From assembly GCF_006345805.1 (NCBI RefSeq), contig NC_043014.1:2728001-2792000 (forward strand): a stretch of 64,000 nt of DNA, given 5' to 3'. The notes beneath the pieces were generated by a model. The model had not been told where the DNA came from and made no database searches. It was given only the letters and a program-made list of their open reading frames with translations. The translations under genes were made by a program, and so were the position numbers. Shown here one piece after another: positions 30,116-41,390 of this stretch. Within the stretch, counting starts at the first letter, position 1, and every line of letters begins with the position of its first letter. The DNA comes from Octopus sinensis. Lineage: Eukaryota.

Positions 30116-31179
30116 CATAAATTGTGAAGGGAACACATCTGGGATAGCAACAACGCAACTGAGTTGGCAACAATATCTGATGAGAAAGCAACAAGTATCT
30201 GCAATAGCAACAACATATCCTGAATTTTGGATAATAACACAGTGGAGATAGTAACAGCAATGGACTGATATATCAACAACAGGAGTGGATTAGCAACAAC
30301 AATGACAAAAGTGGGTTAGCAACATCTGTGAAAGCACTGATACAAACTGGGAGAATTGCAACACATCTGGGTTAGCAACAACACAACCAAGAAAGCAACA
30401 AACATCTAAGATAGCAACAGCACATCTGAGCAATAGCAACAAAACCACAGTGAATTAAGTTGAAAATTATCAAAATAGTAGGTGTAGGAGTGGCTGTGTG
30501 GTAAGTAGCTTGCTTACGAACCACATGGTTCCAGATTCAGTCCCACTGCGTGGCACCTTGGGCAAGTGTCTTCTACTATAGCCTCAGGCCGACCAAAGCC
30601 TTGTGAGTGGATTTGGTAGACAGAAACTGAAAGAAGCCCGTCGTATATATGTATGTGTGTGTGTGTTTGTGTTTGTCCCCCCAACATCGCTTGACAATCG
30701 ATGGTGGTGTGTTTACATCCCTGTAACTTAGCAGTTCGGCAAAAGAGACAGATAGAACAAGTACTAGGCTTACAAAGAATAAGTCCTGGGGTCGATTTGC
30801 TCGACTAAAAGCGGTGCTCCAGCATGGCCACAGTCAAATGACTGAAACAATTAAGAGAGTAAAAGAGAATTAAATACACTGATTTCAAGACCCACCTATT
30901 TGTGGGAAGGCCACGGTCAAGTAAACCAACCATTACGTTTTGACGACCCCAGGAGATTAAAAAGGAAGAGTTATTCCTGGGGTATTTGAACTCAGAAACG
31001 TCACACAACATAATGATATTAAAATAATTTATTGACAAAAGAATGATATGTGCATGTACATACATAATTGTGTATGTTTGTATATATGTATTGAGTGTGT
31101 ATCTTTATATGCATGTGTGCGTGAATGTGTGTATAAACATTTTAGTGTGCATGTCTAAGCTGATATAAATACATGTGTG

Positions 31180-31211
<32 letters not shown>

Positions 31212-31224
<13 letters not shown>

Positions 31225-31415
31225 TTAGAGACAAAACCACTATTTTGCAAATCAAACAAAGAAAGACTTAATCCAATACATAAAAAAATTTTAATATAAA
31301 TTAAATAAAATTATAATTTTATTTAATTTATATTAAAATTTTTTTATGTATTGGATTAAGTCTTTCTTTGTTTGATTTGCAAAATAGTGGTTTTGTCTCT
31401 AATTAATATTATATA
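31212..31415. repeat. Perfect 204-bp spacerless palindrome
   Basis: 31212..31313 is the exact reverse complement of 31314..31415, centred on aaaattataatttt. Confidence 0.9.
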
Positions 31416-31729
31416 ATATTTTACTATAAAATTGGATTCAATCCTAAATCTGATTTTCCCTGTAAATTTGGATTTATTCCCTAATATTTATTATTATATA
31501 TATATATATATATATACAAATGTAAATCTATGTGTGTCTCTAGTCAAATGTATTTACAAAGAGTTAAGAGAACAGATGAATGGACAAGAGGAGACAACTC
31601 TGTCAATTGGTAACTAGTTAGAAACGGTAACATGACAGTTGAAAATTATTACTGTAATGGTCACCCAGAGCAGTAAAGAACAGAAAGGCACTTGACATCT
31701 TCCAAGGTAATGTAGCATCATTTTATATA

Positions 31730-33043
31730 TTAAACACCTGCATATTCAGTTTCCTGGTTTAGCTTCTTGAATTCCACAACTCGCAGGAAGATATATTCCA
31801 GTATATGTTTGGCATCTTTCGATTCTGAAGAGAGTTTAGTGGTCACCCCTAAAATATCTCCACACTCTCGTATGTAATACTCAAGGTCAGAGTCTGTGCA
31901 CTTATTTGTGAGTTGGGCCAGACGAGCCTTCTCCGACGAGAATTGCTCGTCGAGGTCAAACAGATCCAAACTGGGGGCAGGCAGTTCCCGAAGAGCCAAC
32001 GGGAAAACAGCCGGCTGGAGTGGACTGAGAGGGGTTTCAAACTGTGGGGTGATCAGTGCAAGGGTGTCATGCTTCACATGCAGTTCGTTGTAGGCCCGAA
32101 TCGCTGTGGGGATGAGGGACGTGTCCAGTTTGTACAGAGAGTTGTCAAACAGGGAGGCAATGTCGCGAGGAATGTCGTCCGTTTCCTGCAAACAAGTCTT
32201 CAGTTCTTCAGACAAGGTGGACATTTGTGGCAGCATGTTGTAGTCAGATATGTCTGGGTCATCGGCATCGATCTGGTTCAGTTTGATGTTGTTTGTGGTG
32301 AGAAATTTCAGCAGAACTTCCAGGATCTTCAGATTCTCTTCTTTCTCTAAGTAAGTATCGTTAAACATATGTACAGAACCGAGAACGGCGAGTTTGCCTT
32401 TGCTTTGCTGGCTGGAATACAGGGCACACACTGGACGGTTGAGTGGGAACGACACAGTGCCTGACGACAAGATGGACACAGCTGGAGCAATGACATTCAG
32501 GGTCGCACCAAAAGGATACAGAAACGAGAGTGCTTGTGCATTGTTCCCACCATCAGAATCACTGATCAGTCCTGAGTTCAGCTTCCCTGCTGCTTGGCTG
32601 ATGGCTCTGTTCAGGACCCCATTCTGTACCAACACTTCTTTAGGGTGGAAATACTTGTGATAAGATGTCCTCACAACAGAGTCGCTGTTTATCATAATAC
32701 CATATTCTTCAAGCAGGAAGTTGATGTTGTTTTCGTATCGGTCTTCTCCGCCTTCACCCAGCATCACAAATATATTGCCGCCCTTGGCAACGTAGTGTTT
32801 CATGACATTGAACTCATCCTGAGTGAATTTCTCGCGGGGAGCCGCCAGGACAAACACACGGGCACTGGCGAGCTTCTCCTCGGTAATCGAGTCCTTGTTG
32901 TTTTGGAATCTCCAGTCAGACCGAAGTTTACGACTGAAGGTTTTGAAACCTCGACCCAGGGAGAACAACTCGTTTTTGCAAGTATTAAAAAGTATCAAGT
33001 TACCAGGATTCCCACCTTCAACGCCTTCTGTGACAGGTGCCAT
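31730..33043 (-). CDS. IFT52: Intraflagellar transport protein 52, intronless CDS, 437 aa
   Basis: GIFT-domain motifs (PREKFT.DEF, VMLGEGGE, INFLLEEYGI, YHKYFHPKE, YPFGATL, FPLNRP) and C-terminal LPQ/ITPQFETPL...LFDLDEQFSSEK. Full length with no stops. Confidence 0.96.
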   Translation of the reverse strand: MAPVTEGVEGGNPGNLILFNTCKNELFSLGRGFKTFSRKLRSDWRFQNNKDSITEEKLASARVFVLAAPREKFTQDEFNVMKHYVAKGGNIFVMLGEGGEDRYENNINFLLEEYGIMINSDSVVRTSYHKYFHPKEVLVQNGVLNRAISQAAGKLNSGLISDSDGGNNAQALSFLYPFGATLNVIAPAVSILSSGTVSFPLNRPVCALYSSQQSKGKLAVLGSVHMFNDTYLEKEENLKILEVLLKFLTTNNIKLNQIDADDPDISDYNMLPQMSTLSEELKTCLQETDDIPRDIASLFDNSLYKLDTSLIPTAIRAYNELHVKHDTLALITPQFETPLSPLQPAVFPLALRELPAPSLDLFDLDEQFSSEKARLAQLTNKCTDSDLEYYIRECGDILGVTTKLSSESKDAKHILEYIFLRVVEFKKLNQETEYAGV

Positions 33044-33075
33044 GTTTCTGGAATGTTTTAGATATCAACCCACTT

Positions 33076-33100
33076 CTGAAAGAAAAAAAACAGAGAAATA
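33076..33100 (-). promoter_or_regulatory. 3' splice acceptor of a putative 5'-UTR intron of IFT52
   Basis: Minus strand tttctctgttttttttctttcag|aagtgg, a strong polypyrimidine tract plus CAG, about 32 nt before the ATG. Confidence 0.6.
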
Positions 33101-33144
33101 GATATATAACTTATATATAAGTAGATAAGTATGTATATATATAT

Positions 33145-33350
33145 ATATATATAGTTAATCCAAACAAGAAAGCACAAAAAAACACAACGTGAGGACATGG
33201 AACAAATATAGTATTATTGGACGCTCAGGAAAGAAGGAGGGTTTAACGTTTCAAGCGGAGCTCTTCGTCGGAAACATAGAAGGAAAGATCCAGAGAAGGG
33301 AAGACAGAGGAAAAAAATCGCCAACGGTACAAACGCGGTCACATTTTGAA
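33145..33350 (-). mobile_element. Penelope-like pseudo-LTR fragment in (TA)n
   Basis: Flanked by (TA)n and contains ccgacgaagagc..gcttgaaacgt, a PLE/hammerhead-like motif. Similar fragments at about 35340..35530 and 54150..54340. Confidence 0.45.
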
Positions 33351-33561
33351 TGTATATATATATAAATTAGAAAAAAAACCCACCTTTCATCAATTCAATA
33401 ATGAAAAATTAAATTATACCATTTAGAAAAATTACATATTATAGAAAGATTAAATATAAATATATAAATTATATATATATATATATATTATATTTTGTGA
33501 AATTTGATTTAGTATTTCTAAATTGAATTTTTCCCTCTAAGTTTGGAATAATATTCCCTCA

Positions 33562-33595
<34 letters not shown>

Positions 33596-33634
33596 ATATA
33601 TCAGTGGAAATTGCAGCTGTGGTTAAGCGAACCA

Positions 33635-34095
33635 TCCGATCGTGGTCGTTGCCGGCGCCACCCCGTCTGGCCTCCATGCCGGTGGGACGTAAAAGCACCA
33701 TCCATTCGTGTCCGCTGCTAGCCTCGCCTGGCTCCCGTGCTGGTGGCACGTAAAAGCACCATCTGTTCGTGGCCGTTGTCAGCCTCGCCTGGCCCCGTGC
33801 CGGTGGCATGTAAAAGCACCATCTGCTCGTGTCCGTTGCCAGCCTCGCGTGGCACGTAAAAGCACTATCCGTTCGTGGCCGTTTGCCAGCTCCGTCTGGC
33901 ACCTGTGCGGGTGGCACGTAAAAAGCACCCACTACACTCACGGAGTGGTTGGCGTTAGGAAGGGCATCCAGCCGTAGAAACACTGCCAGATCTGACTGGG
34001 CCTGATGCAGCCTTCCGGCTTCACAGACCCCAGTTGAACCGTCCAACCCATGCTAGCATGGAAAGCAGACGCTAAATGATGATGATGATGATGAT
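33635..34095 (+). mobile_element. SINE family C with an internal array of about six imperfect 40-50-bp repeats (ggtggcacgtaaaagcaccatc...)
   Basis: Tandem subunits at 33640..33930, then the ggaagggcatccagccgtagaaac core and (GAT)n tail. Confidence 0.8.
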
Positions 34096-34097
34096 GA

Positions 34098-34139
<42 letters not shown>

Positions 34140-34409
34140 TGTCAAAGGGAAATGGAATTTAATTAAAATCAAAACATTCAATCAAAAATTTACATTTCCA
34201 GTGGTCTAACGTGCAAAAATAAAATTAGTCAAGAAGACTATATATTAGTCATATGATATAGTGTGTATTTATACACATAAGGAATCCACTTAACGTGAAT
34301 TCAACACATTAGAAAGAACAGCTAGGTTTACAGAACCTAGCTGTTCTTTCTAATGTGTTCAATTTCACGTAAAGTGGATTCCTTATGTGTATAAATATAC
34401 ACTATATCG

Positions 34410-34442
<33 letters not shown>

Positions 34443-35023
34443 TCACACATTTATATATGTATATATATATATATATTAATAAATACATTAAAGAAGCGCC
34501 AATCTCTAACTGTGGTGGGAAGACATGGGATGAAGTAATGAAGCATGGTCTTCAAACGTTGGCCCTCCCAAGGGCAAATGGCTAATGACAGAGACTGTTG
34601 ACGCTAAGCTGTGCTTGAGAAGGTCCATCAAGCCAAGTGAAATTGTAGTCGTGGCCAATGCTGGGGTCACGTAACTGGCACCCATGCTGGTTGCACAAAA
34701 AACACACTTTTTGAGCGTTGGGCCTCACGGAGGCAATGTGGATGATGTCAGTGACATGTAAAAAGTAGCTTTCGAGTATTTGGGCCTCACAGAGGCAATG
34801 ACAAATTACCGAAACCTTTGGCATTATGCTGGGCTTGAGAAGAAGACCCATCAAGCCAAGTGAAATAGGGGTTGTAGCAGATATTGGTGTCACACAGCTG
34901 GCACTTAAAAGCACTCATTACATTCTCTGGAGTGGTTGGCATTAGGAAGGGCATCCAGTTGTAGAAACCATGCCAATTCAGACTAGAGTCTGGTGCAGCC
35001 GCTCAGCTTACTAGCCCTTAACC

Positions 35024-35243
35024 CAGTGCTTTTCAGCCTTTTTTGCTGGAGCGGAACCCGAAGGAAACATTCCACTGGCTCGAGGAACCCCTGTGTAACA
35101 ATTTAATATTCTTATGCACAAATATCTGCACAGGAGAATTAAAAATTACTGCCGATTTTAGCAGTTTTGTAACATCTTGCGGAACCCCTGGACTGTACTG
35201 GCGGAACCCTAAGGTTCCGCGGAACCCTGGTTGAAAACCACTG
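35024..35243. mobile_element. hAT (Charlie-like) MITE inserted in a family C SINE
   Basis: TIRs cagtgcttttcagcc / ggttgaaaaccactg. Flanks ccttaacc / atttaacc (6 of 8 match). Confidence 0.7.
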
Positions 35244-36079
35244 ATTTAACCAAACCATCCAACCCATGCCAGCATGGATAATGGATGTTAAATGATGATG
35301 ACATATATAAATACATACACATATTTATATATAAATACATAACGGAGTAAACACATAAATGTGAAACAAGGTGGAAAAAGAGTACTCAAATACCAGTGGT
35401 AGAGTAATATGCTTTAGTTAAAAGCAGCAGAAAATTTTGCTAGAATTCTAGCAAAAACTGTCCAACGAACGGGAACGTGAAACTCAGAGTAACAGGTTTT
35501 GTTGAATTTTCTGCTGCTTTTAAATAAAGTATATAAATACATAGAAATACACACATATATATACTAATGTGAAAAGAATTCGTAAATATAATTAAAAAAT
35601 TAAATTCCTGTAGAATAAAAAAAAAGAGGGGGGGGTTGTATGTTGATATTTGCTGTGGGAATTGGTTCGCAAATGAAAATGCCAGAATTCTGGTTTAAGC
35701 TCCCCAAAACGTTTATATTTTTTGTTATTTTCAGAAAATTTTTGCGGGAATTCATACGATTATGGAAAAAGTTTTTCATTTTTTTAAACCCCACTATAAA
35801 CACTATAAACCCTAAATGGTCCACACTTTTTCGATTTTTTTCTTCTTTGAAACCAGAGTTTAAAATACGGACGGTCCGACCTCTTTGCTTAAATACCCCA
35901 CAGTGGACCACCCCTGGGTGCATCCTCATTCCATTAAACGTTTTTATGGAGTGGAAAATTTTGAAAAACGTGGAATTTTCAGAAAAATTTGGCGAATTTG
36001 TGTTCTGCTAGTCTTATAGTCTTTTATTTGTTGCAGTCGTTTGGCTACAGCCATGCTGTAACGTTCACAAGTTATACCA

Positions 36080-36200
36080 TTCCTGTATCCTTTTGCTGCG
36101 ACATTGAATGTCATTGCTCCAGCTGTATCTATCTGGGACAGTTTCGTTCCCACTCAACCGTCCCGTACGTACCCTGTATTATTCCAGCCAGCAAAACAAA
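36080..36200 (+). pseudogene. IFT52: Decayed IFT52 fragment, inverted relative to the intact gene
   Basis: Aligns to IFT52 32524..32399 (FLYPFGATLNVIAPAVSI...GTVSFPLNRPV..LYSSQQ.K) with 15 substitutions, an 8-nt frameshifting deletion and a 3-nt insertion. Confidence 0.9.
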
Positions 36201-36973
36201 AGTTTAAAGTTTTCGAAATTTTTTTTAAATCACAGTCCAAATTCTTTTCTTTTTCTTTTTTCTTTTACTTGTTTCAGTCATTTGACTGCGGCCATGCTGG
36301 AGCACCGCCTTTTAGTCGAGTAAATCAACCCGGGACTTATTCTTTGTAAGCCCAGTACTTATTCTATCGGTCTCTTTTGCCGAACCGCTAAGTTACGGGG
36401 ACGTAAACACACCAGCATCGGTTGTCAAGCGATGCTGGGGGACAAACACAGACACACAAACACACACATATACATATATACGACAGGCTTCTTTCAGTTT
36501 CCATCTACCAAATCCACTCACAAGGCATTGGTCGGCCCGGGGCTATAGCAGAAGACACTTGCCCAAGATTCCACGCAGTGGGACTGAACCCAGAACCATG
36601 TGGTTGGTTAGCAAGCTACTTACCACACAGCCACTCCTGCGCCTATTCTTGGCTTAAATCCCAAAACAGACGATTAAATGTGTTTATGGGAAGAAAGATA
36701 TTGAAAGACATCAATATATCAGAGAGATAAACAAACGAAGTCGGTATGAGGTGGTCGTGAGATGTGCTAAAAATAACGGCTAAATACTGCTTAAATCACA
36801 TTTTTTTTTGCATAGGCGTAGGAGTAGCTGTGTGGTAAGTAGCTTGCTTACCAACCATATGGTTCCGGGTTCAGTCCCACTATGTGGCACCTTGGGCAAG
36901 TGTCTTCTACTATAGCCTCGGGCTGACCAAAGCCTTGTAGACGGAAACTGAAAGAAGCATGTCGTATATATGC

Positions 36974-37009
<36 letters not shown>

Positions 37010-38264
37010 TTGTGTGTCTGTGTTTGTCCCCCTAGCATTGCTTGACAACTGATGCTGGTGCGTTTACGTTCCCGTCACTTAGCGGTTCGGCAAAAGAGAC
37101 CGATAGAATAAGTACTAGGCTTACAAAGAATGAGTCCCGGGGTCGATTTGCTCGACTAAAGGCGGTGCTCCAGCATGGCCGCAGTCAAATGCCTCAAACA
37201 AGTAAAAGAGTAAAACGAGTCGTATAAATTCCGGTGTGTATAACATAAATTCATTAACAAATTTCTGAGTTATGAAAAAACAAACCGGGGTGGAGAGAGA
37301 CACATTTATATAGGGAAATATTGTAATAAAAATGTATTTGTTAGAAAATTATGTAGAAACAAAGTCGGAGGTAGGGTGTCACACAATTGCGGTTTTGCTG
37401 ATTAAAATGAAATTTCTTCAAAATTGTTTCGCTCTCAGAGAAGCCCCCAGGAGCGGCTGTGTGGTAAGTAGCTTGTTTACAAACCACATGGTTCCGGGTT
37501 CAGTCCCACTGCGTGGCACCTTGGGCAAGTGTCTTCTACTACCAAAGCCTTGTGAGTGGATTTGGTAGACGGAAACTGAAAGAAGCCCGTCGTATATATG
37601 TATATATATATATATATATGCATGTGTGTGTGTTTGTGTGTCTGTGTTTGTCCCCCTAGCATTGCTTGACAACCGATGCTGGTGTGTTTACGTCCCCGTA
37701 ACTTAGCGGTTCGCCAAAAGAGACCGATAGAATAAGTACTGGGCTTACAAAAAATAAATCCCGGGTCGATTTACTCGATTAAAAAGGCGGTGCTCCAGCA
37801 TGGCCGCAGTCAAATGACTGAAACAAGTAAAAGAGAGTAAACCGCCCCCTAAATCTGGATTAAATAACAACTTACCATTTAATATTGGCCCTGATGTTTC
37901 GCCATTACGGCACAGAATGCTGTAAATGAATGTCTTAGATGAAGTTTTGACCCATAAACCACAATTCGATTCACTAGATCAATACCAATAAGCTATTGAT
38001 AGTTTGGAGGTGAATATAAAGAAGATAACGTTGTCAACGGAGGAGTTTGATTACAACATGGCGTTTATTGCCTTGGAGACAGTCGTCACCGGTGTCCACG
38101 GTTAATTAACAAAAAAATCTCTTCTGTAAATTTATTCCATATAATTTCCCTCTCGTTTTCTCTTTATTTTTCTTCTCCCCGCCTCTCTCTCTCTTCGAAA
38201 AATTAAACTACATTAAATTTACAAATTACAATTTTCTCAAGAAAGCCAAGAGAAAAAAAATGTT

Positions 38265-38611
38265 GGCGATCTTTCGTCTCTAGTAGACCTCTCCGTCGAT
38301 TTCCGTAAAAAATTTTTTTTTTTACATATGGGCTTGCGGGAACTTTTGAAGTAATGAGAGCGAAAGAGACTAAGAGAAAGCGATTTTATGACGAGGGAAG
38401 TTCACACACACACACACACACGCGCACACACACACATGTACATCAATGCTTTCCATGCACGATAACTTCAAAAGAACTTCCCTCGTCATACAATCGCTTT
38501 CTCTTAGTCTCTTTCGCTCTCATTACTTCAAAAGTTCCCGCAAGCCCATATGTAAAAAAAAAAATTTTTACGGAAATCGACGGAAAGGTCTACTAGAGAC
38601 GAAAGATTGCC
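38265..38611. mobile_element. MITE family M3 (GGCGATCTTTCGTC termini, about 138-bp near-perfect TIRs) nested in an M2 remnant
   Basis: Exact 8-bp TSD aaaatgtt (38257..38264 / 38612..38619). The host M2 sequence continues to its terminus at 38712. Confidence 0.88.
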
Positions 38612-39516
38612 AAAATGTTTTATTTTGACACATTCTACCAGTATACGAAGTTTAAAAGTGTTTAGTTAACAAAAAATTGTGTTGAAAACTGCCGTTCAAA
38701 AGGAAAAGATCCCTCTCTTTCTTCCTTTCTGTTTACCTCTCTTTCCTCCCATGGCCCTCCCTTTCATAATCCTCTTCCTCTCCCTCTTTCTGCTTACTGT
38801 TCTCTTCTTTCTCTCTTTTTTCTTATATATCTCCCTTCTTTCTCTCTCTCTCTCTTTCTCTCTCCCTTTCTCTTTATCTCTGCTCTTTCTGTCTCCCTCT
38901 TCTCTCATTCTTCGTCTTCCTTCTTCTCTTTCATCAACTCTCCATCACTCTCTGCTCCTTCTCCCTTCTCTCCATAGCCCTTCCTCTCCCTTCCATTCCG
39001 TCTCCTCCCAGCCTCAACAGCAATTAGATATACTAAAACTCTTTCCGTGTCTACCAAACTTTAGAGGTAACCTTATATAATCAACAGAAATTTCACGAAG
39101 TCATCTTTCTCCACCGAAAAACATCCCAATACACGATACAACATCAAACACTATGGATGCTCACAATGCAATAATTATTTTAAATTTCGTTTTCAGACAA
39201 GGAAGAACAGTTTCTTCGTTTTTCAGGGTCAGACGGGTGGAAACAATACACTCTGTACCCACGTCAAATAATTGTAGGTCAATGTCTGCTGCGAACATGT
39301 ATATAGTGCAGTCATAGCTGAGTATTTAAGACGTTCACTTCACTGCCACGTTGATGTGGGTTCGATCTCAACTCGCAGCCCAGTGTGTTTCTTAAAACTT
39401 TTTTCTTTTCTCTTTTTTGTTGTGTGGGATTGTGAAGAGGCCAGTCGATAGAAGAAGAGGTTGTAAAAGCCTTACAAACCTACTCAGACGTTTCTGACCG
39501 ACAGGTACCAACCGGT

Positions 39517-40460: not shown

Positions 40461-40917
40461 TGTGTGTCTGTGTGCCCCACGCGTGCACGTGTGATGATTT
40501 CCTTGTTTGTGCCCCACCACTGCTTGACAACCGATGTTGGTATGTTTACGTCCCCATAACATAGCGGTTCATCAAAAGAGAATGACAGAAAAAGTACCAA
40601 GCTTAACCAAAAAAGTCCTGGGGTCGATTCGTTCGACTAAAAATTCTTCAAGGTGGTGCCCCAGCATGGCCGCAGTCTAATAACTAAAACAGGTAAGAGA
40701 TAAAAGATGAAAAAAAAAGATATACAAACGTCCGTTTCATACATTTCTTTCGGCCGTTTACGTTCTTAGTTCAAATCCCGCCGAGGTCAGCCTTACCTTT
40801 TTATCTTTTCAGGTTTGATCAAATGAAGTAATCGTCGATGATATCGATTAAAACCCCCGTCCTTGTGCCTCAAAATTGTTGGCTTTGCGCTTTAATCAGA
40901 GGCAATTATTATAATTA

Positions 40918-41390
40918 GCGAGCTGGCAGAATCGTTAGCATGCCGGGCGAAATGCGTAGCGGTATTTCGTCTGCCGTTACATTCTGAGTTCAAATTCCGC
41001 CGAGGTTGACTTTGCCTTTCATCCTTTCGGAGTCGATTAAATAAGTACCAGTTACGCACTGAGGTCGATATAATCGACTTAATCCGTTTGTCTGTCCTTG
41101 TTTGTCCCCTCTGTTTTTAGCCCCTTGAGGGTAGTAAAGAAATAGGTATTTCGTCTGCCGTTACATTCTGAGTTCAAATTCCGCCGAGGTCGACTTTGCC
41201 TTTCATCCTTTCGGGGTCGATAAATTAAGTACCAGTTACGCACTGGGGTCGATGTAATCGACTTAATCCGTTCGTCTATCCTTGTTTGTCCTCTCTGTGT
41301 TTAGCTCCTTGTGGGTAGTAAAAAAAATGGGTATTTTTAACGTCTCTCTGCATACTGAGTTCAAATCCCATCGAGATCCACTTTGCCTTT
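40918..41390 (+). mobile_element. SINE family B with internal tandem duplication (about 2.3 units of about 185 bp)
   Basis: ggtatttcgtctgccgttacattctgagttcaaattccgccgagg occurs at about 40960 and 41146, with a third partial unit near 41330. Confidence 0.8.

What the first reader, a model, noticed from the sequence alone, without database searches (positions are those of the whole stretch)
32399..36200. Inverted, selection-scarred IFT52 fragment upstream of IFT52 that could fold back onto the coding sequence
Seen: 36080..36200 (+) aligns to IFT52 CDS 32524..32399 (-) with 15 substitutions, 11 synonymous and 4 non-synonymous, plus an 8-nt deletion and a 3-nt insertion. The synonymous excess suggests the fragment came from a separate IFT52 copy that was once under coding constraint (perhaps the parental locus), not from a recent neutral duplication. 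On the IFT52-transcribed strand the fragment is antisense, and a splice acceptor 32 nt before the ATG implies transcription starts further upstream. If the 5'-UTR intron spans 36080..36200, the pre-mRNA could form a duplex of about 120 bp with its own CDS, in which 6 of the 15 mismatches become G-U wobbles. Established: coleoids recode mRNAs extensively by ADAR editing, which needs such complementary elements. Inference: a pseudogene relic may have been co-opted as an editing-complementary or regulatory sequence.
Basis: partly seen in the sequence, partly recalled or inferred. Interest (0 to 1): 0.8.

Follow-up and report, generated by a model that had tools for sequence, protein, structure and literature searches.

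The report
Decaying inverted IFT52 fragment in intron
A 137-base inverted copy of part of the octopus IFT52 coding sequence lies in what is probably the gene's own 5'UTR intron and could pair with the exon in the unspliced RNA. Across three Octopus species it decays like ordinary non-coding DNA, so it is most likely a duplication relic and not a selected RNA-editing element.

Summary
Window 36064..36200 (+) is an inverted, degraded copy of IFT52 CDS nt 504-645 (window 32399..32540, -), with blastn E 1e-29. The window is Octopus sinensis. The same fragment sits at the orthologous site in O. vulgaris and O. bimaculoides. It was not found in the sequenced flanks of Argonauta or of a decapod.

The "selection scar / parental copy" reading fails. 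The fragment branches inside the Octopus IFT52 clade, and the CDS is already intronless in all coleoids examined. Polarised changes on the fragment side are 11 synonymous-like to 13 nonsynonymous-like, plus four lineage-specific indels.

The fragment diverges between species about as fast as its flanks. No compensatory pair changes are seen.

The structural premise holds up indirectly. A conserved block ends in the only positionally conserved G|GTAAGT donor (exon end 37876), which implies a 4.8-kb 5'UTR intron containing the fragment. The minimum-energy fold of that putative pre-mRNA pairs 121 fragment bases with the CDS.

Best reading: a neutral relic of a small inverted templated duplication. 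It may be an incidental ADAR substrate. No RNA data were reachable to test editing.

The parts
36064..36200 (+). Inverted IFT52 fragment. The + strand is the IFT52 sense strand. It is homologous to CDS nt 504-645 (codons 168-215), with an 8-nt deletion, a 3-nt TAT duplication and no intact frame.
   Evidence: Orthologous copies lie at L001 7221-7356 (O. vulgaris) and L003 7644-7789 (O. bimaculoides).
32399..32540 (-). Source and partner segment of the IFT52 coding sequence (CDS nt 504-645). It encodes a highly conserved stretch, ...QALSFLYPFGATLNVIAPAVSILSSGTVSFPLNRPVCALYSSQQSK.
   Evidence: Its divergence between O. sinensis and O. bimaculoides is 8/143, the same rate as the whole CDS at 74/1314.
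31730..33043 (-). IFT52 coding sequence: a single exon of 437 aa plus stop, 100% identical to the O. sinensis and O. vulgaris proteins.
   Evidence: Pfam IFT52_GIFT, IFT52_central, Itf52_C.
33044..33075 (-). 5'UTR part of exon 2 (32 nt). It is preceded by the acceptor ttttttttctttcag, with the AG at 33077-33076.
   Evidence: The acceptor is conserved in O. sinensis, O. vulgaris, O. bimaculoides, an unidentified octopodid (L005) and Argonauta.
33076..37875 (-). Inferred 5'UTR intron of 4800 nt, mostly SINEs, TA repeats and foldback elements. It contains the fragment.
   Evidence: Inference. The same arrangement is seen in O. vulgaris (4048 nt) and O. bimaculoides (2897 nt). The Argonauta gene model has a 3346-nt intron here.
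37876..38149 (-). Candidate promoter plus non-coding exon 1. This is a conserved block that ends at the donor AAATG|GTAAGT, with the last exon base at 37876. The TSS within the block was not determined.
   Evidence: Identity is 99.6% between O. sinensis and O. vulgaris and 92% between O. sinensis and O. bimaculoides. The CDS values are 99.5% and 94.4%. This is the only G|GTAAGT conserved in position in 10 kb upstream of all three species. An AG-rich tract lies upstream, as in Argonauta.
38067..38080 (-). X-box-like (RFX-type) motif GTCTCCAAGGCAAT, 204 nt upstream of the donor. It is identical in the three Octopus species.
   Evidence: This is weak evidence: the motif has one mismatch to the GTHNYYWWRRNAAC consensus recalled from memory, and no strict X-box was found.
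36020..36063 (+). About 44 nt of the 3' tail of an Octopus tRNA-derived SINE. It directly abuts the fragment, and the junction is shared by all three species.
   Evidence: (D20, I11, I12).

Best explanation
The fragment is a non-functional relic of one small inverted duplication.

Origin (shown). In the Octopus stem lineage, about 143 bp of the already intronless IFT52 coding sequence (nt 503-645) was copied in inverted orientation. This happened after the split from Argonauta and before the split of O. bimaculoides from O. vulgaris/O. sinensis.

Location (inferred). The copy landed a few kb upstream, inside what is most probably the gene's 5'UTR intron.

Mechanism (inferred). The most likely route is a DNA-level templated insertion, that is replication template switching or break repair using nearby sequence. 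Two features point this way: the copy is short, local and inverted, and four substitutions cluster at one junction.

Subsequent history (shown). The copy has since drifted. Each lineage has acquired its own indels and substitutions at about the rate of the surrounding intron.

Consequence (predicted, not observed). Because the copy is young it is still about 80-88% complementary to the exon. If the intron assignment is right, the pre-mRNA can transiently form a duplex of about 120-130 bp. That could make it an incidental ADAR substrate, in the way inverted repeats in introns are.
For: Single origin and orthology:
- The fragment lies in a collinear block in all three species, with the same SINE-tail junction.
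- A tree with independent origins costs 138 parsimony steps against 109-111 for a single origin.

Source is the Octopus intronless gene:
- The fragment joins at the base of the (O. bimaculoides,(O. sinensis,O. vulgaris)) CDS clade. Placing it outside Argonauta costs 8 extra steps.
- It shares the Octopus-specific codons for SSQQ(S/N)K.
- It overhangs the ancestral exon on both sides, with a perfect TTCACA match upstream, so the template had no introns.
- The CDS is intronless in four octopodids, Argonauta and a decapod.

Neutral decay:
- Changes on the fragment clade are 11 synonymous-like to 13 nonsynonymous-like, against 10:2 on the CDS clade.
- The neutral expectation for the synonymous fraction is 0.27-0.34, giving P = 0.04-0.17 for the fragment clade.
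- Indels are lineage-specific: an 8-nt deletion in O. sinensis and O. vulgaris, +3 nt in O. sinensis, +1 nt in O. vulgaris and +3 nt in O. bimaculoides.
- Fragment identity between O. sinensis and O. bimaculoides is 89.4% plus 14 gap columns. Flanks are 92.0% and 74-79%, and four-fold sites differ by 15.3%.
- None of 142 pairs shows a compensatory change, and covariation is not above shuffles.
- The CDS partner segment is no more constrained than the rest of the CDS.

Absence elsewhere: no copy is found in Argonauta (13.4 kb upstream covered) or in a decapod (6.1 kb upstream).
Against: - The O. sinensis path alone has 10 synonymous-like changes of 18 (P about 0.02-0.05, uncorrected), so a faint third-position excess remains in that lineage.
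- With three species, two of them nearly identical, the power to detect constraint or covariation is low.
- The near flank (window 35834-36023) and the fragment are both on the conserved side of the intron's range.
- The fragment's ends fall within 6-10 nt of an ancestral exon's ends. I treat this as coincidence, with a rough chance of a few percent.
- The adjacent SINE tail could instead point to an RNA-mediated origin.
- No RNA data were available, so a selected function cannot be excluded directly.
Confidence: 0.7

Rival explanations
1. Young editing-complementary or regulatory element. The intronic antisense fragment folds back on the exon in the pre-mRNA, recruits ADAR and drives recoding or hyper-editing of IFT52 codons 168-215, or causes nuclear retention. 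On this reading it is retained by selection.
For: - The fragment lies inside the inferred 5'UTR intron in all three species.
- The duplex energy is -198 to -226 kcal/mol, against -66 for shuffles.
- The MFE of the 5.75-kb putative pre-mRNA pairs 121 fragment nt with the CDS.
- 89% of pair cells are standard pairs, counting G-U.
- The fragment has persisted since before the split of O. bimaculoides from O. vulgaris.
- Coleoids edit extensively (established knowledge).
Against: - Between-species divergence equals that of the flanks, and lineage-specific indels bulge the duplex.
- There are no compensatory pairs. Of the 13 transitions that I sorted by hand from the substitution list, 8 preserve pairing, against about 50% expected.
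- The paired CDS segment shows no extra synonymous constraint.
- The fragment is absent from Argonauta and a decapod, although the peptide is identical or nearly so there.
- The target peptide is among the most conserved parts of IFT52, so promiscuous recoding would probably be harmful.
- The TSS and editing are unverified.
Confidence: 0.1
2. Relic exon of the ancestral intron-containing (parental) IFT52 gene, or of a second once-functional IFT52 copy, left next to the intronless gene.
For: - The fragment (CDS nt 503/504-645) nearly coincides with one exon of oyster IFT52, which corresponds to Octopus CDS nt 510 to about 636-639.
Against: - The CDS is intronless in both octopods and a decapod, so any parental copy diverged before the coleoid radiation. 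Four-fold sites are 61-71% different at that depth. The fragment is 84-88% identical to the Octopus CDS and shares Octopus-specific states, and placing it outside Argonauta costs 8 extra steps.
- The fragment continues 6-7 nt and 6-9 nt beyond the ancestral exon ends into sequence of the neighbouring exons, with no AG or GT at the ancestral boundaries.
- No other exon relics occur in 64 kb.
- The synonymous excess disappears when changes are polarised.
Confidence: 0.03
3. RNA-mediated origin. The fragment is a chimeric, 5'-truncated retrocopy made when a LINE reverse transcriptase copying a SINE tail switched template. The outcome is the same, a neutral relic, but the birth mechanism differs.
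For: - In all three species the fragment directly abuts about 44 nt of a SINE 3' tail.
- LINE ORFs and SINEs are abundant in these loci.
Against: - In the SINE's own orientation the attached piece is antisense IFT52. A template switch would therefore need an antisense IFT52 RNA.
- There is no poly(A), and I could not recognise target-site duplications.
- A source only 2-3 kb away in cis and in inverted orientation is the usual signature of DNA-level template switching (established knowledge).
Confidence: 0.12
4. Hairpin source of endogenous siRNAs. The exon-intron fold-back is diced and feeds back on IFT52 expression.
For: The same duplex potential as above.
Against: There are no small-RNA data, and the evolutionary pattern is the same neutral one. 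An intramolecular nuclear duplex that is removed by splicing is a poor Dicer substrate (inference).
Confidence: 0.03

Closest known systems
Small inverted segmental duplications or templated insertions that leave gene-fragment pseudogenes (replication template switching, FoSTeS/MMBIR-type, or filler DNA at repaired breaks)
   Same: The copy is short (about 143 bp), local (2-3 kb from its source), inverted and non-coding. It has clustered changes next to one junction (CDS nt 512-517) and then decays neutrally with indels.
   Different: The mechanism is inferred from anatomy only. Junction microhomology is minimal, at 1 nt or less by eye. A SINE tail sits at one junction, which is not a typical feature.
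Intronic editing-complementary sequences (ECS) of ADAR targets, e.g. the GluA2 Q/R-site ECS in the adjacent intron
   Same: This is an intronic sequence complementary to an exon of the same pre-mRNA, so it would have to act before splicing.
   Different: Classical ECS are conserved above background and pair over tens of bases around specific edited adenosines. This one is much longer and near-perfect, lies 3 kb upstream in a 5'UTR intron, evolves like its flanks and has no demonstrated editing.
Inverted repeat pairs (e.g. Alu-Alu in primates, SINE pairs in cephalopod introns) that form long dsRNA and are hyper-edited as a by-product
   Same: It is a long imperfect intramolecular duplex formed by two inverted copies in one primary transcript, and any editing would be promiscuous and non-adaptive. 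This is the behaviour I consider most likely if the duplex forms at all.
   Different: One arm is a conserved coding exon, not a second repeat copy. By-product editing would therefore recode a protein.
Pseudogene-derived or hairpin endo-siRNA loci (mouse oocytes, Drosophila hpRNAs)
   Same: An inverted gene-derived fragment is able to form dsRNA with the parent gene's sequence.
   Different: Those loci are defined by small-RNA output, and none is known here. The duplex here is intramolecular and would be destroyed by splicing.

Membership tests
Duplicated gene fragment (non-processed pseudogene fragment) | Significant nucleotide homology to a functional gene, restricted to part of it | tested here: met
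   blastn E = 1.4e-29 in O. sinensis and 6.7e-41 in O. bimaculoides. Only CDS nt 503-645 is copied.
Duplicated gene fragment (non-processed pseudogene fragment) | No maintained reading frame, with frame-breaking indels that differ between lineages | tested here: met
   There is an 8-nt deletion in O. sinensis and O. vulgaris, a 1-nt insertion in O. vulgaris, and 3-nt insertions in O. sinensis and O. bimaculoides.
Duplicated gene fragment (non-processed pseudogene fragment) | Neutral substitution pattern and rate after duplication | tested here: met
   Changes are 11 synonymous-like to 13 nonsynonymous-like, against a neutral expectation of 27-34% synonymous. Between-species identity is within the range of the flanks.
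ADAR editing-complementary sequence (ECS) | Lies in the same primary transcript as the edited exon | tested here: inconclusive
   A candidate exon 1 with a conserved donor lies upstream of the fragment in three species. No transcript evidence was reachable.
ADAR editing-complementary sequence (ECS) | Can base-pair with the exon | tested here: met
   duplexfold gives -198 to -226 kcal/mol against -66 +/- 6 for shuffles. 121 nt are paired in the MFE of the 5.75-kb putative pre-mRNA.
ADAR editing-complementary sequence (ECS) | Conserved above neutral background, with pairing maintained by compensatory change | tested here: not met
   Divergence equals that of the flanks. None of 142 pairs has changes on both sides, and the covariation score is not above shuffles. 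Power is low with three species.
ADAR editing-complementary sequence (ECS) | A-to-I editing observed at the paired exon sites | not testable with these tools
   No octopus RNA reads or transcript contigs are accessible. The stored part of the O. bimaculoides recoding table in PMC9989829 lists IFT88 but not IFT52, and the file is truncated.
Processed (retro) pseudogene | Poly(A) tract at the sense 3' end and target-site duplications | tested here: not met
   The sense 3' end reads ...CAAAACAAAAGTTTAAAGTTTTCGAAATTTTTTTT. There is no poly(A) and no recognisable TSD.
Relic exon of an intron-containing parental gene | Homology stops at the ancestral exon boundaries, and the fragment branches outside the clade of intronless copies | tested here: not met
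   The fragment overhangs the oyster exon boundaries by 6-7 nt and 6-9 nt. It nests within Octopus, and placement outside Argonauta costs 8 extra steps.

The most novel reading that the evidence does not exclude
The fragment is a snapshot of the birth of an editing-complementary sequence. An inverted self-duplication of a coding segment into the gene's own 5'UTR intron creates, in one step, a 120-130-bp exon-intron duplex. This duplex makes a deeply conserved part of IFT52 editable in Octopus but not in Argonauta or decapods. The editing may already be used or tolerated even though sequence constraint is not yet detectable.
Probability: 0.1. Interest if true: 0.7.

Novelty: new member of a known kind. 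Interest (0 to 1): 0.3.

Why it matters
As it stands, this is an ordinary gene-fragment relic. It also shows that a raw synonymous excess between a gene and its dead copy is not evidence that the copy was once constrained, because the living partner contributes only synonymous changes.

It would matter if public Octopus RNA-seq showed clustered A-to-G changes in IFT52 codons 168-215 only in species that carry the fragment. That would give a dated, natural example of how an ADAR substrate can arise by self-duplication. The origin of editing-complementary sequences is largely unknown.

The side observation may be of independent interest for cephalopod genome evolution: coleoid IFT52 has lost all coding introns but kept a 5'UTR intron.

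Tried and rejected
- Transcript evidence for the TSS. The exact-protein look-up returned only genome records. The Logan contigs L005-L007 are unspliced and genomic-like, from another octopodid, and differ only by C/T polymorphisms. An N-terminal protein search found no octopus partial transcripts.
- RFX X-box as a promoter marker. There are no strict matches in any locus and no conserved matches at 10 of 12 positions or better. Only a one-mismatch motif lies in the candidate promoter block.
- Sequence orthology between the Argonauta annotated exon 1 and the Octopus candidate exon 1. The local alignment score is at the null level. Only an AG-rich low-complexity tract is shared.
- CpG-rich windows as promoter candidates. 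The best one (window 40801-41300) is SINE-like sequence specific to the O. sinensis lineage.
- Published editing tables. PMC5499236 is not held. The PMC8382921 supplements have no IFT entries. The PMC9989829 table is truncated.
- Rfam scan of 30500-39500. No family was matched.
- Oyster microsynteny, to separate in-situ intron loss from retroposition. The neighbouring genes differ, so this is uninformative.
- Capture by a multi-copy transposon. The flanks of the fragment are single-copy within the window and the fetched loci. The whole genome could not be searched.


Full report
WHAT IS THERE. The window is Octopus sinensis. The 437-aa ORF at 31730..33043 (-) is IFT52 and matches GCA_006345805.1 exactly. 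Locus L002 from that assembly is 100% identical to the window over the CDS, and the fragment lies at the same offset. The claimed inverted repeat is real. Window 36080..36200 (+) aligns with the reverse complement of 32399..32524 at 80.6% identity over 129 columns (E 1.4e-29), with an 8-nt deletion and a 3-nt insertion. In O. bimaculoides the self-match is CDS nt 503-645 at 84% (E 7e-41). No other IFT52 piece occurs in the 64 kb.

RELATED SPECIES. The fragment is present at the orthologous place in O. vulgaris (L001 7221-7356) and O. bimaculoides (L003 7644-7789). It sits in a collinear block, and one end abuts the same ~44-nt SINE 3' tail in all three species. It was not found in Argonauta hians (13.4 kb upstream and 10 kb downstream covered) or in a decapod genomic contig. 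The IFT52 CDS is a single exon in all coleoid sequences obtained: three Octopus species, a fourth octopodid from a Logan assembly, Argonauta and a decapod. Oyster IFT52 has at least ten coding exons.

WHERE THE FRAGMENT CAME FROM. I ran parsimony on CDS nt 502-645 with the three fragments and six CDS sequences. Independent origins cost 138 steps against 109-111 for a single origin. The fragment clade attaches at the base of the (O. bimaculoides,(O. sinensis,O. vulgaris)) CDS clade. Placing it outside the fourth octopodid costs 3 extra steps, and placing it outside Argonauta costs 8. The fragment carries the Octopus-specific codons TCC AGC CAG CAA A(A/G)C AAA, where Argonauta and the decapod read quite differently. 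The source was therefore the intronless Octopus gene itself, copied after the Argonauta split and before the bimaculoides/vulgaris split. It was not an ancient parental locus, which would have to pre-date the coleoid radiation. Four-fold sites are 61-71% different at that depth.

One coincidence needs stating. The fragment nearly matches one ancestral exon; the oyster exon corresponds to Octopus nt 510 to about 636-639. However, the fragment continues beyond both boundaries into neighbouring-exon sequence. The match TTCACA is perfect upstream, and 8 of 9 bases match downstream. There is no AG or GT at the ancestral boundaries. The template therefore had no introns.

THE 'SELECTION SCAR'. I polarised changes with outgroups on the biologically consistent tree. 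The CDS clade has 10 synonymous and 2 nonsynonymous changes. The fragment clade has 11 synonymous-like and 13 nonsynonymous-like changes, plus four lineage-specific indels. Random mutation of the ancestral segment gives 27-34% synonymous under a range of transition, GC-to-AT and CpG biases. This gives P(>=11/24) = 0.04-0.17.
- Several of the differences are synonymous changes on the functional gene's side (nt 522, 543, 585, 588).
- The O. sinensis path happens to be synonymous-rich (10 of 18), while the O. bimaculoides path is synonymous-poor (3 of 13).

CONSTRAINT. Between O. sinensis and O. bimaculoides the fragment is 89.4% identical with 14 gap columns. The flanks are 92.0% (near side) and 74-79% (other flanks). 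Collinear intron blocks are 81-92% (mostly 81-88%), four-fold sites differ by 15.3%, and the CDS is 94.4% identical. Between O. sinensis and O. vulgaris the fragment is 96.2%, the near flank 95.3% and the CDS 99.5%. On an alignment of antisense fragment plus CDS segment from the three species, 142 pairs give 89.3% standard pairs. No pair has changes on both sides, and covariation is not above shuffles. Power is low with three sequences. Of the 13 transitions in the fragment clade, sorted by hand from the substitution list, 8 keep pairing, and about half are expected to. The only both-sides event in any species (nt 549 in O. sinensis) is a parallel CpG-to-TpG change. The CDS segment is no more conserved than the rest of the CDS (8/143 against 74/1314). 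All of this is what neutral decay predicts.

IS THE FRAGMENT TRANSCRIBED WITH IFT52? No transcript data could be reached.
- The acceptor 32 nt before the ATG is conserved in five octopod sequences. The Argonauta gene model splices a small upstream exon (ATGAACG|gtaagg) to the equivalent acceptor across 3.3 kb.
- In Octopus, a block at window 37873..38149 (-) is conserved like coding sequence: 99.6% between O. sinensis and O. vulgaris and 92% between O. sinensis and O. bimaculoides. It ends abruptly at AAATG|GTAAGT.
- This is the only G|GTAAGT conserved in position within 10 kb upstream in all three species. The other G|GTAAGT matches lie in SINE heads at non-orthologous sites.
- The block is preceded by an AG-rich tract, as in Argonauta. 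It contains a conserved X-box-like motif, GTCTCCAAGGCAAT, which is weak evidence.
- Splicing 37876 to 33075 gives a 4800-nt intron in O. sinensis, 4048 nt in O. vulgaris and 2897 nt in O. bimaculoides. The fragment lies inside it in each species.

I rate this gene structure at about 0.65. The Octopus block has no detectable sequence similarity to the Argonauta exon 1.

DUPLEX POTENTIAL. The sense CDS segment against the antisense fragment gives -201 kcal/mol (O. sinensis), -198 (O. vulgaris) and -226 (O. bimaculoides), against -66 +/- 6 for shuffles. In the MFE of the 5751-nt putative pre-mRNA (window 38000..32250, -), 121 fragment bases pair with 32397..32538. This is thermodynamics only. Kinetics, proteins and splicing timing are not modelled.

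VERDICT. The repeat is real and is orthologous in three species. It is probably intronic and antisense in the IFT52 pre-mRNA, so a fold-back is physically plausible. The evolutionary argument for a once-constrained separate copy is wrong, and the comparative data show no sign that the element is maintained. The most likely description is a neutral relic of a small inverted templated duplication. If the duplex forms it would behave like any intronic inverted repeat, as an incidental and probably low-level ADAR substrate. Whether it is edited is a cheap question for anyone with octopus RNA-seq. Until that is done the finding is of modest interest.

Noticed in passing
window 31730..33075 and 33076..37875; loci L001, L003, L004 (13390-14684), L005, L008 (6137-7450), L009: The IFT52 CDS is a single exon in every coleoid sequence obtained (four octopodids, Argonauta, one decapod), while oyster IFT52 has at least 10 coding exons. 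A 5'UTR intron seems to be retained. This pattern fits cDNA-mediated loss of all coding introns, or replacement by a retrogene that acquired a 5' exon. Oyster microsynteny did not discriminate between the two.
   Followed up: partly
window 36064..36200 versus L009 2567-2704: The fragment (CDS nt 503/504-645, about 143 nt, roughly nucleosome-sized) nearly coincides with one ancestral exon, which corresponds to Octopus CDS nt 510 to about 636-639. It overhangs that exon on both sides. I treat this as coincidence, but it is unexplained.
   Followed up: partly
window 36070..36078 (CDS nt 512-517 equivalent): Four substitutions (nt 512, 513, 514 and 517) are clustered on the fragment stem right next to the SINE-side junction, and all three species share them. 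This could be a footprint of error-prone synthesis at the duplication junction.
   Followed up: no
window 31212..31415: There is a perfect 204-nt AT-rich palindrome (two 102-nt arms, 100% complementary, no spacer) about 315 nt downstream of the IFT52 stop codon. It is present in O. vulgaris, and the corresponding stretch is missing from the O. bimaculoides alignment. It is probably a foldback element or MITE and possibly lies within the 3'UTR. If transcribed, it would be a far better dsRNA than the IFT52 fragment.
   Followed up: partly
window 35834..36023: This unique intronic block, next to the fragment on the gene-proximal side, is 92% identical between O. sinensis and O. bimaculoides. That is higher than most of the intron (81-88%). 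No function is assigned.
   Followed up: no
window 38067..38080 (-): The X-box-like motif GTCTCCAAGGCAAT is identical in three Octopus species and lies 204 nt upstream of the candidate exon-1 donor. It is compatible with RFX control of an IFT gene. It has one mismatch to the consensus, and about 3 such matches per 64 kb are expected by chance.
   Followed up: partly
L004 10001-10007 and 13354-13389; window 37876-37878 plus 33075..33044: The Argonauta gene model extends IFT52 by 14 residues from an ATG in a 7-nt initial coding exon. In Octopus an ATG also sits at the very end of the candidate exon 1, but after splicing it opens only a 6-codon uORF (ATG AAG TGG GTT GAT ATC TAA). The Argonauta extension may therefore be an annotation artefact of a conserved uATG.
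   Followed up: no
window 36261..36441 and about 38200..38710: A SINE copy about 60 nt beyond the fragment is present in O. sinensis but not at that site in O. vulgaris or O. bimaculoides. Separately, a ~500-nt insertion with long inverted arms splits the AG-rich tract upstream of the candidate exon 1 in O. sinensis and O. vulgaris only. Together these show rapid turnover of the intron and promoter surroundings.
   Followed up: no
window 33600..33930: Tandem ~60-nt GC-rich repeats (62% GC, CpG o/e about 1) lie inside the inferred intron, next to TE-like sequence.
   Followed up: no
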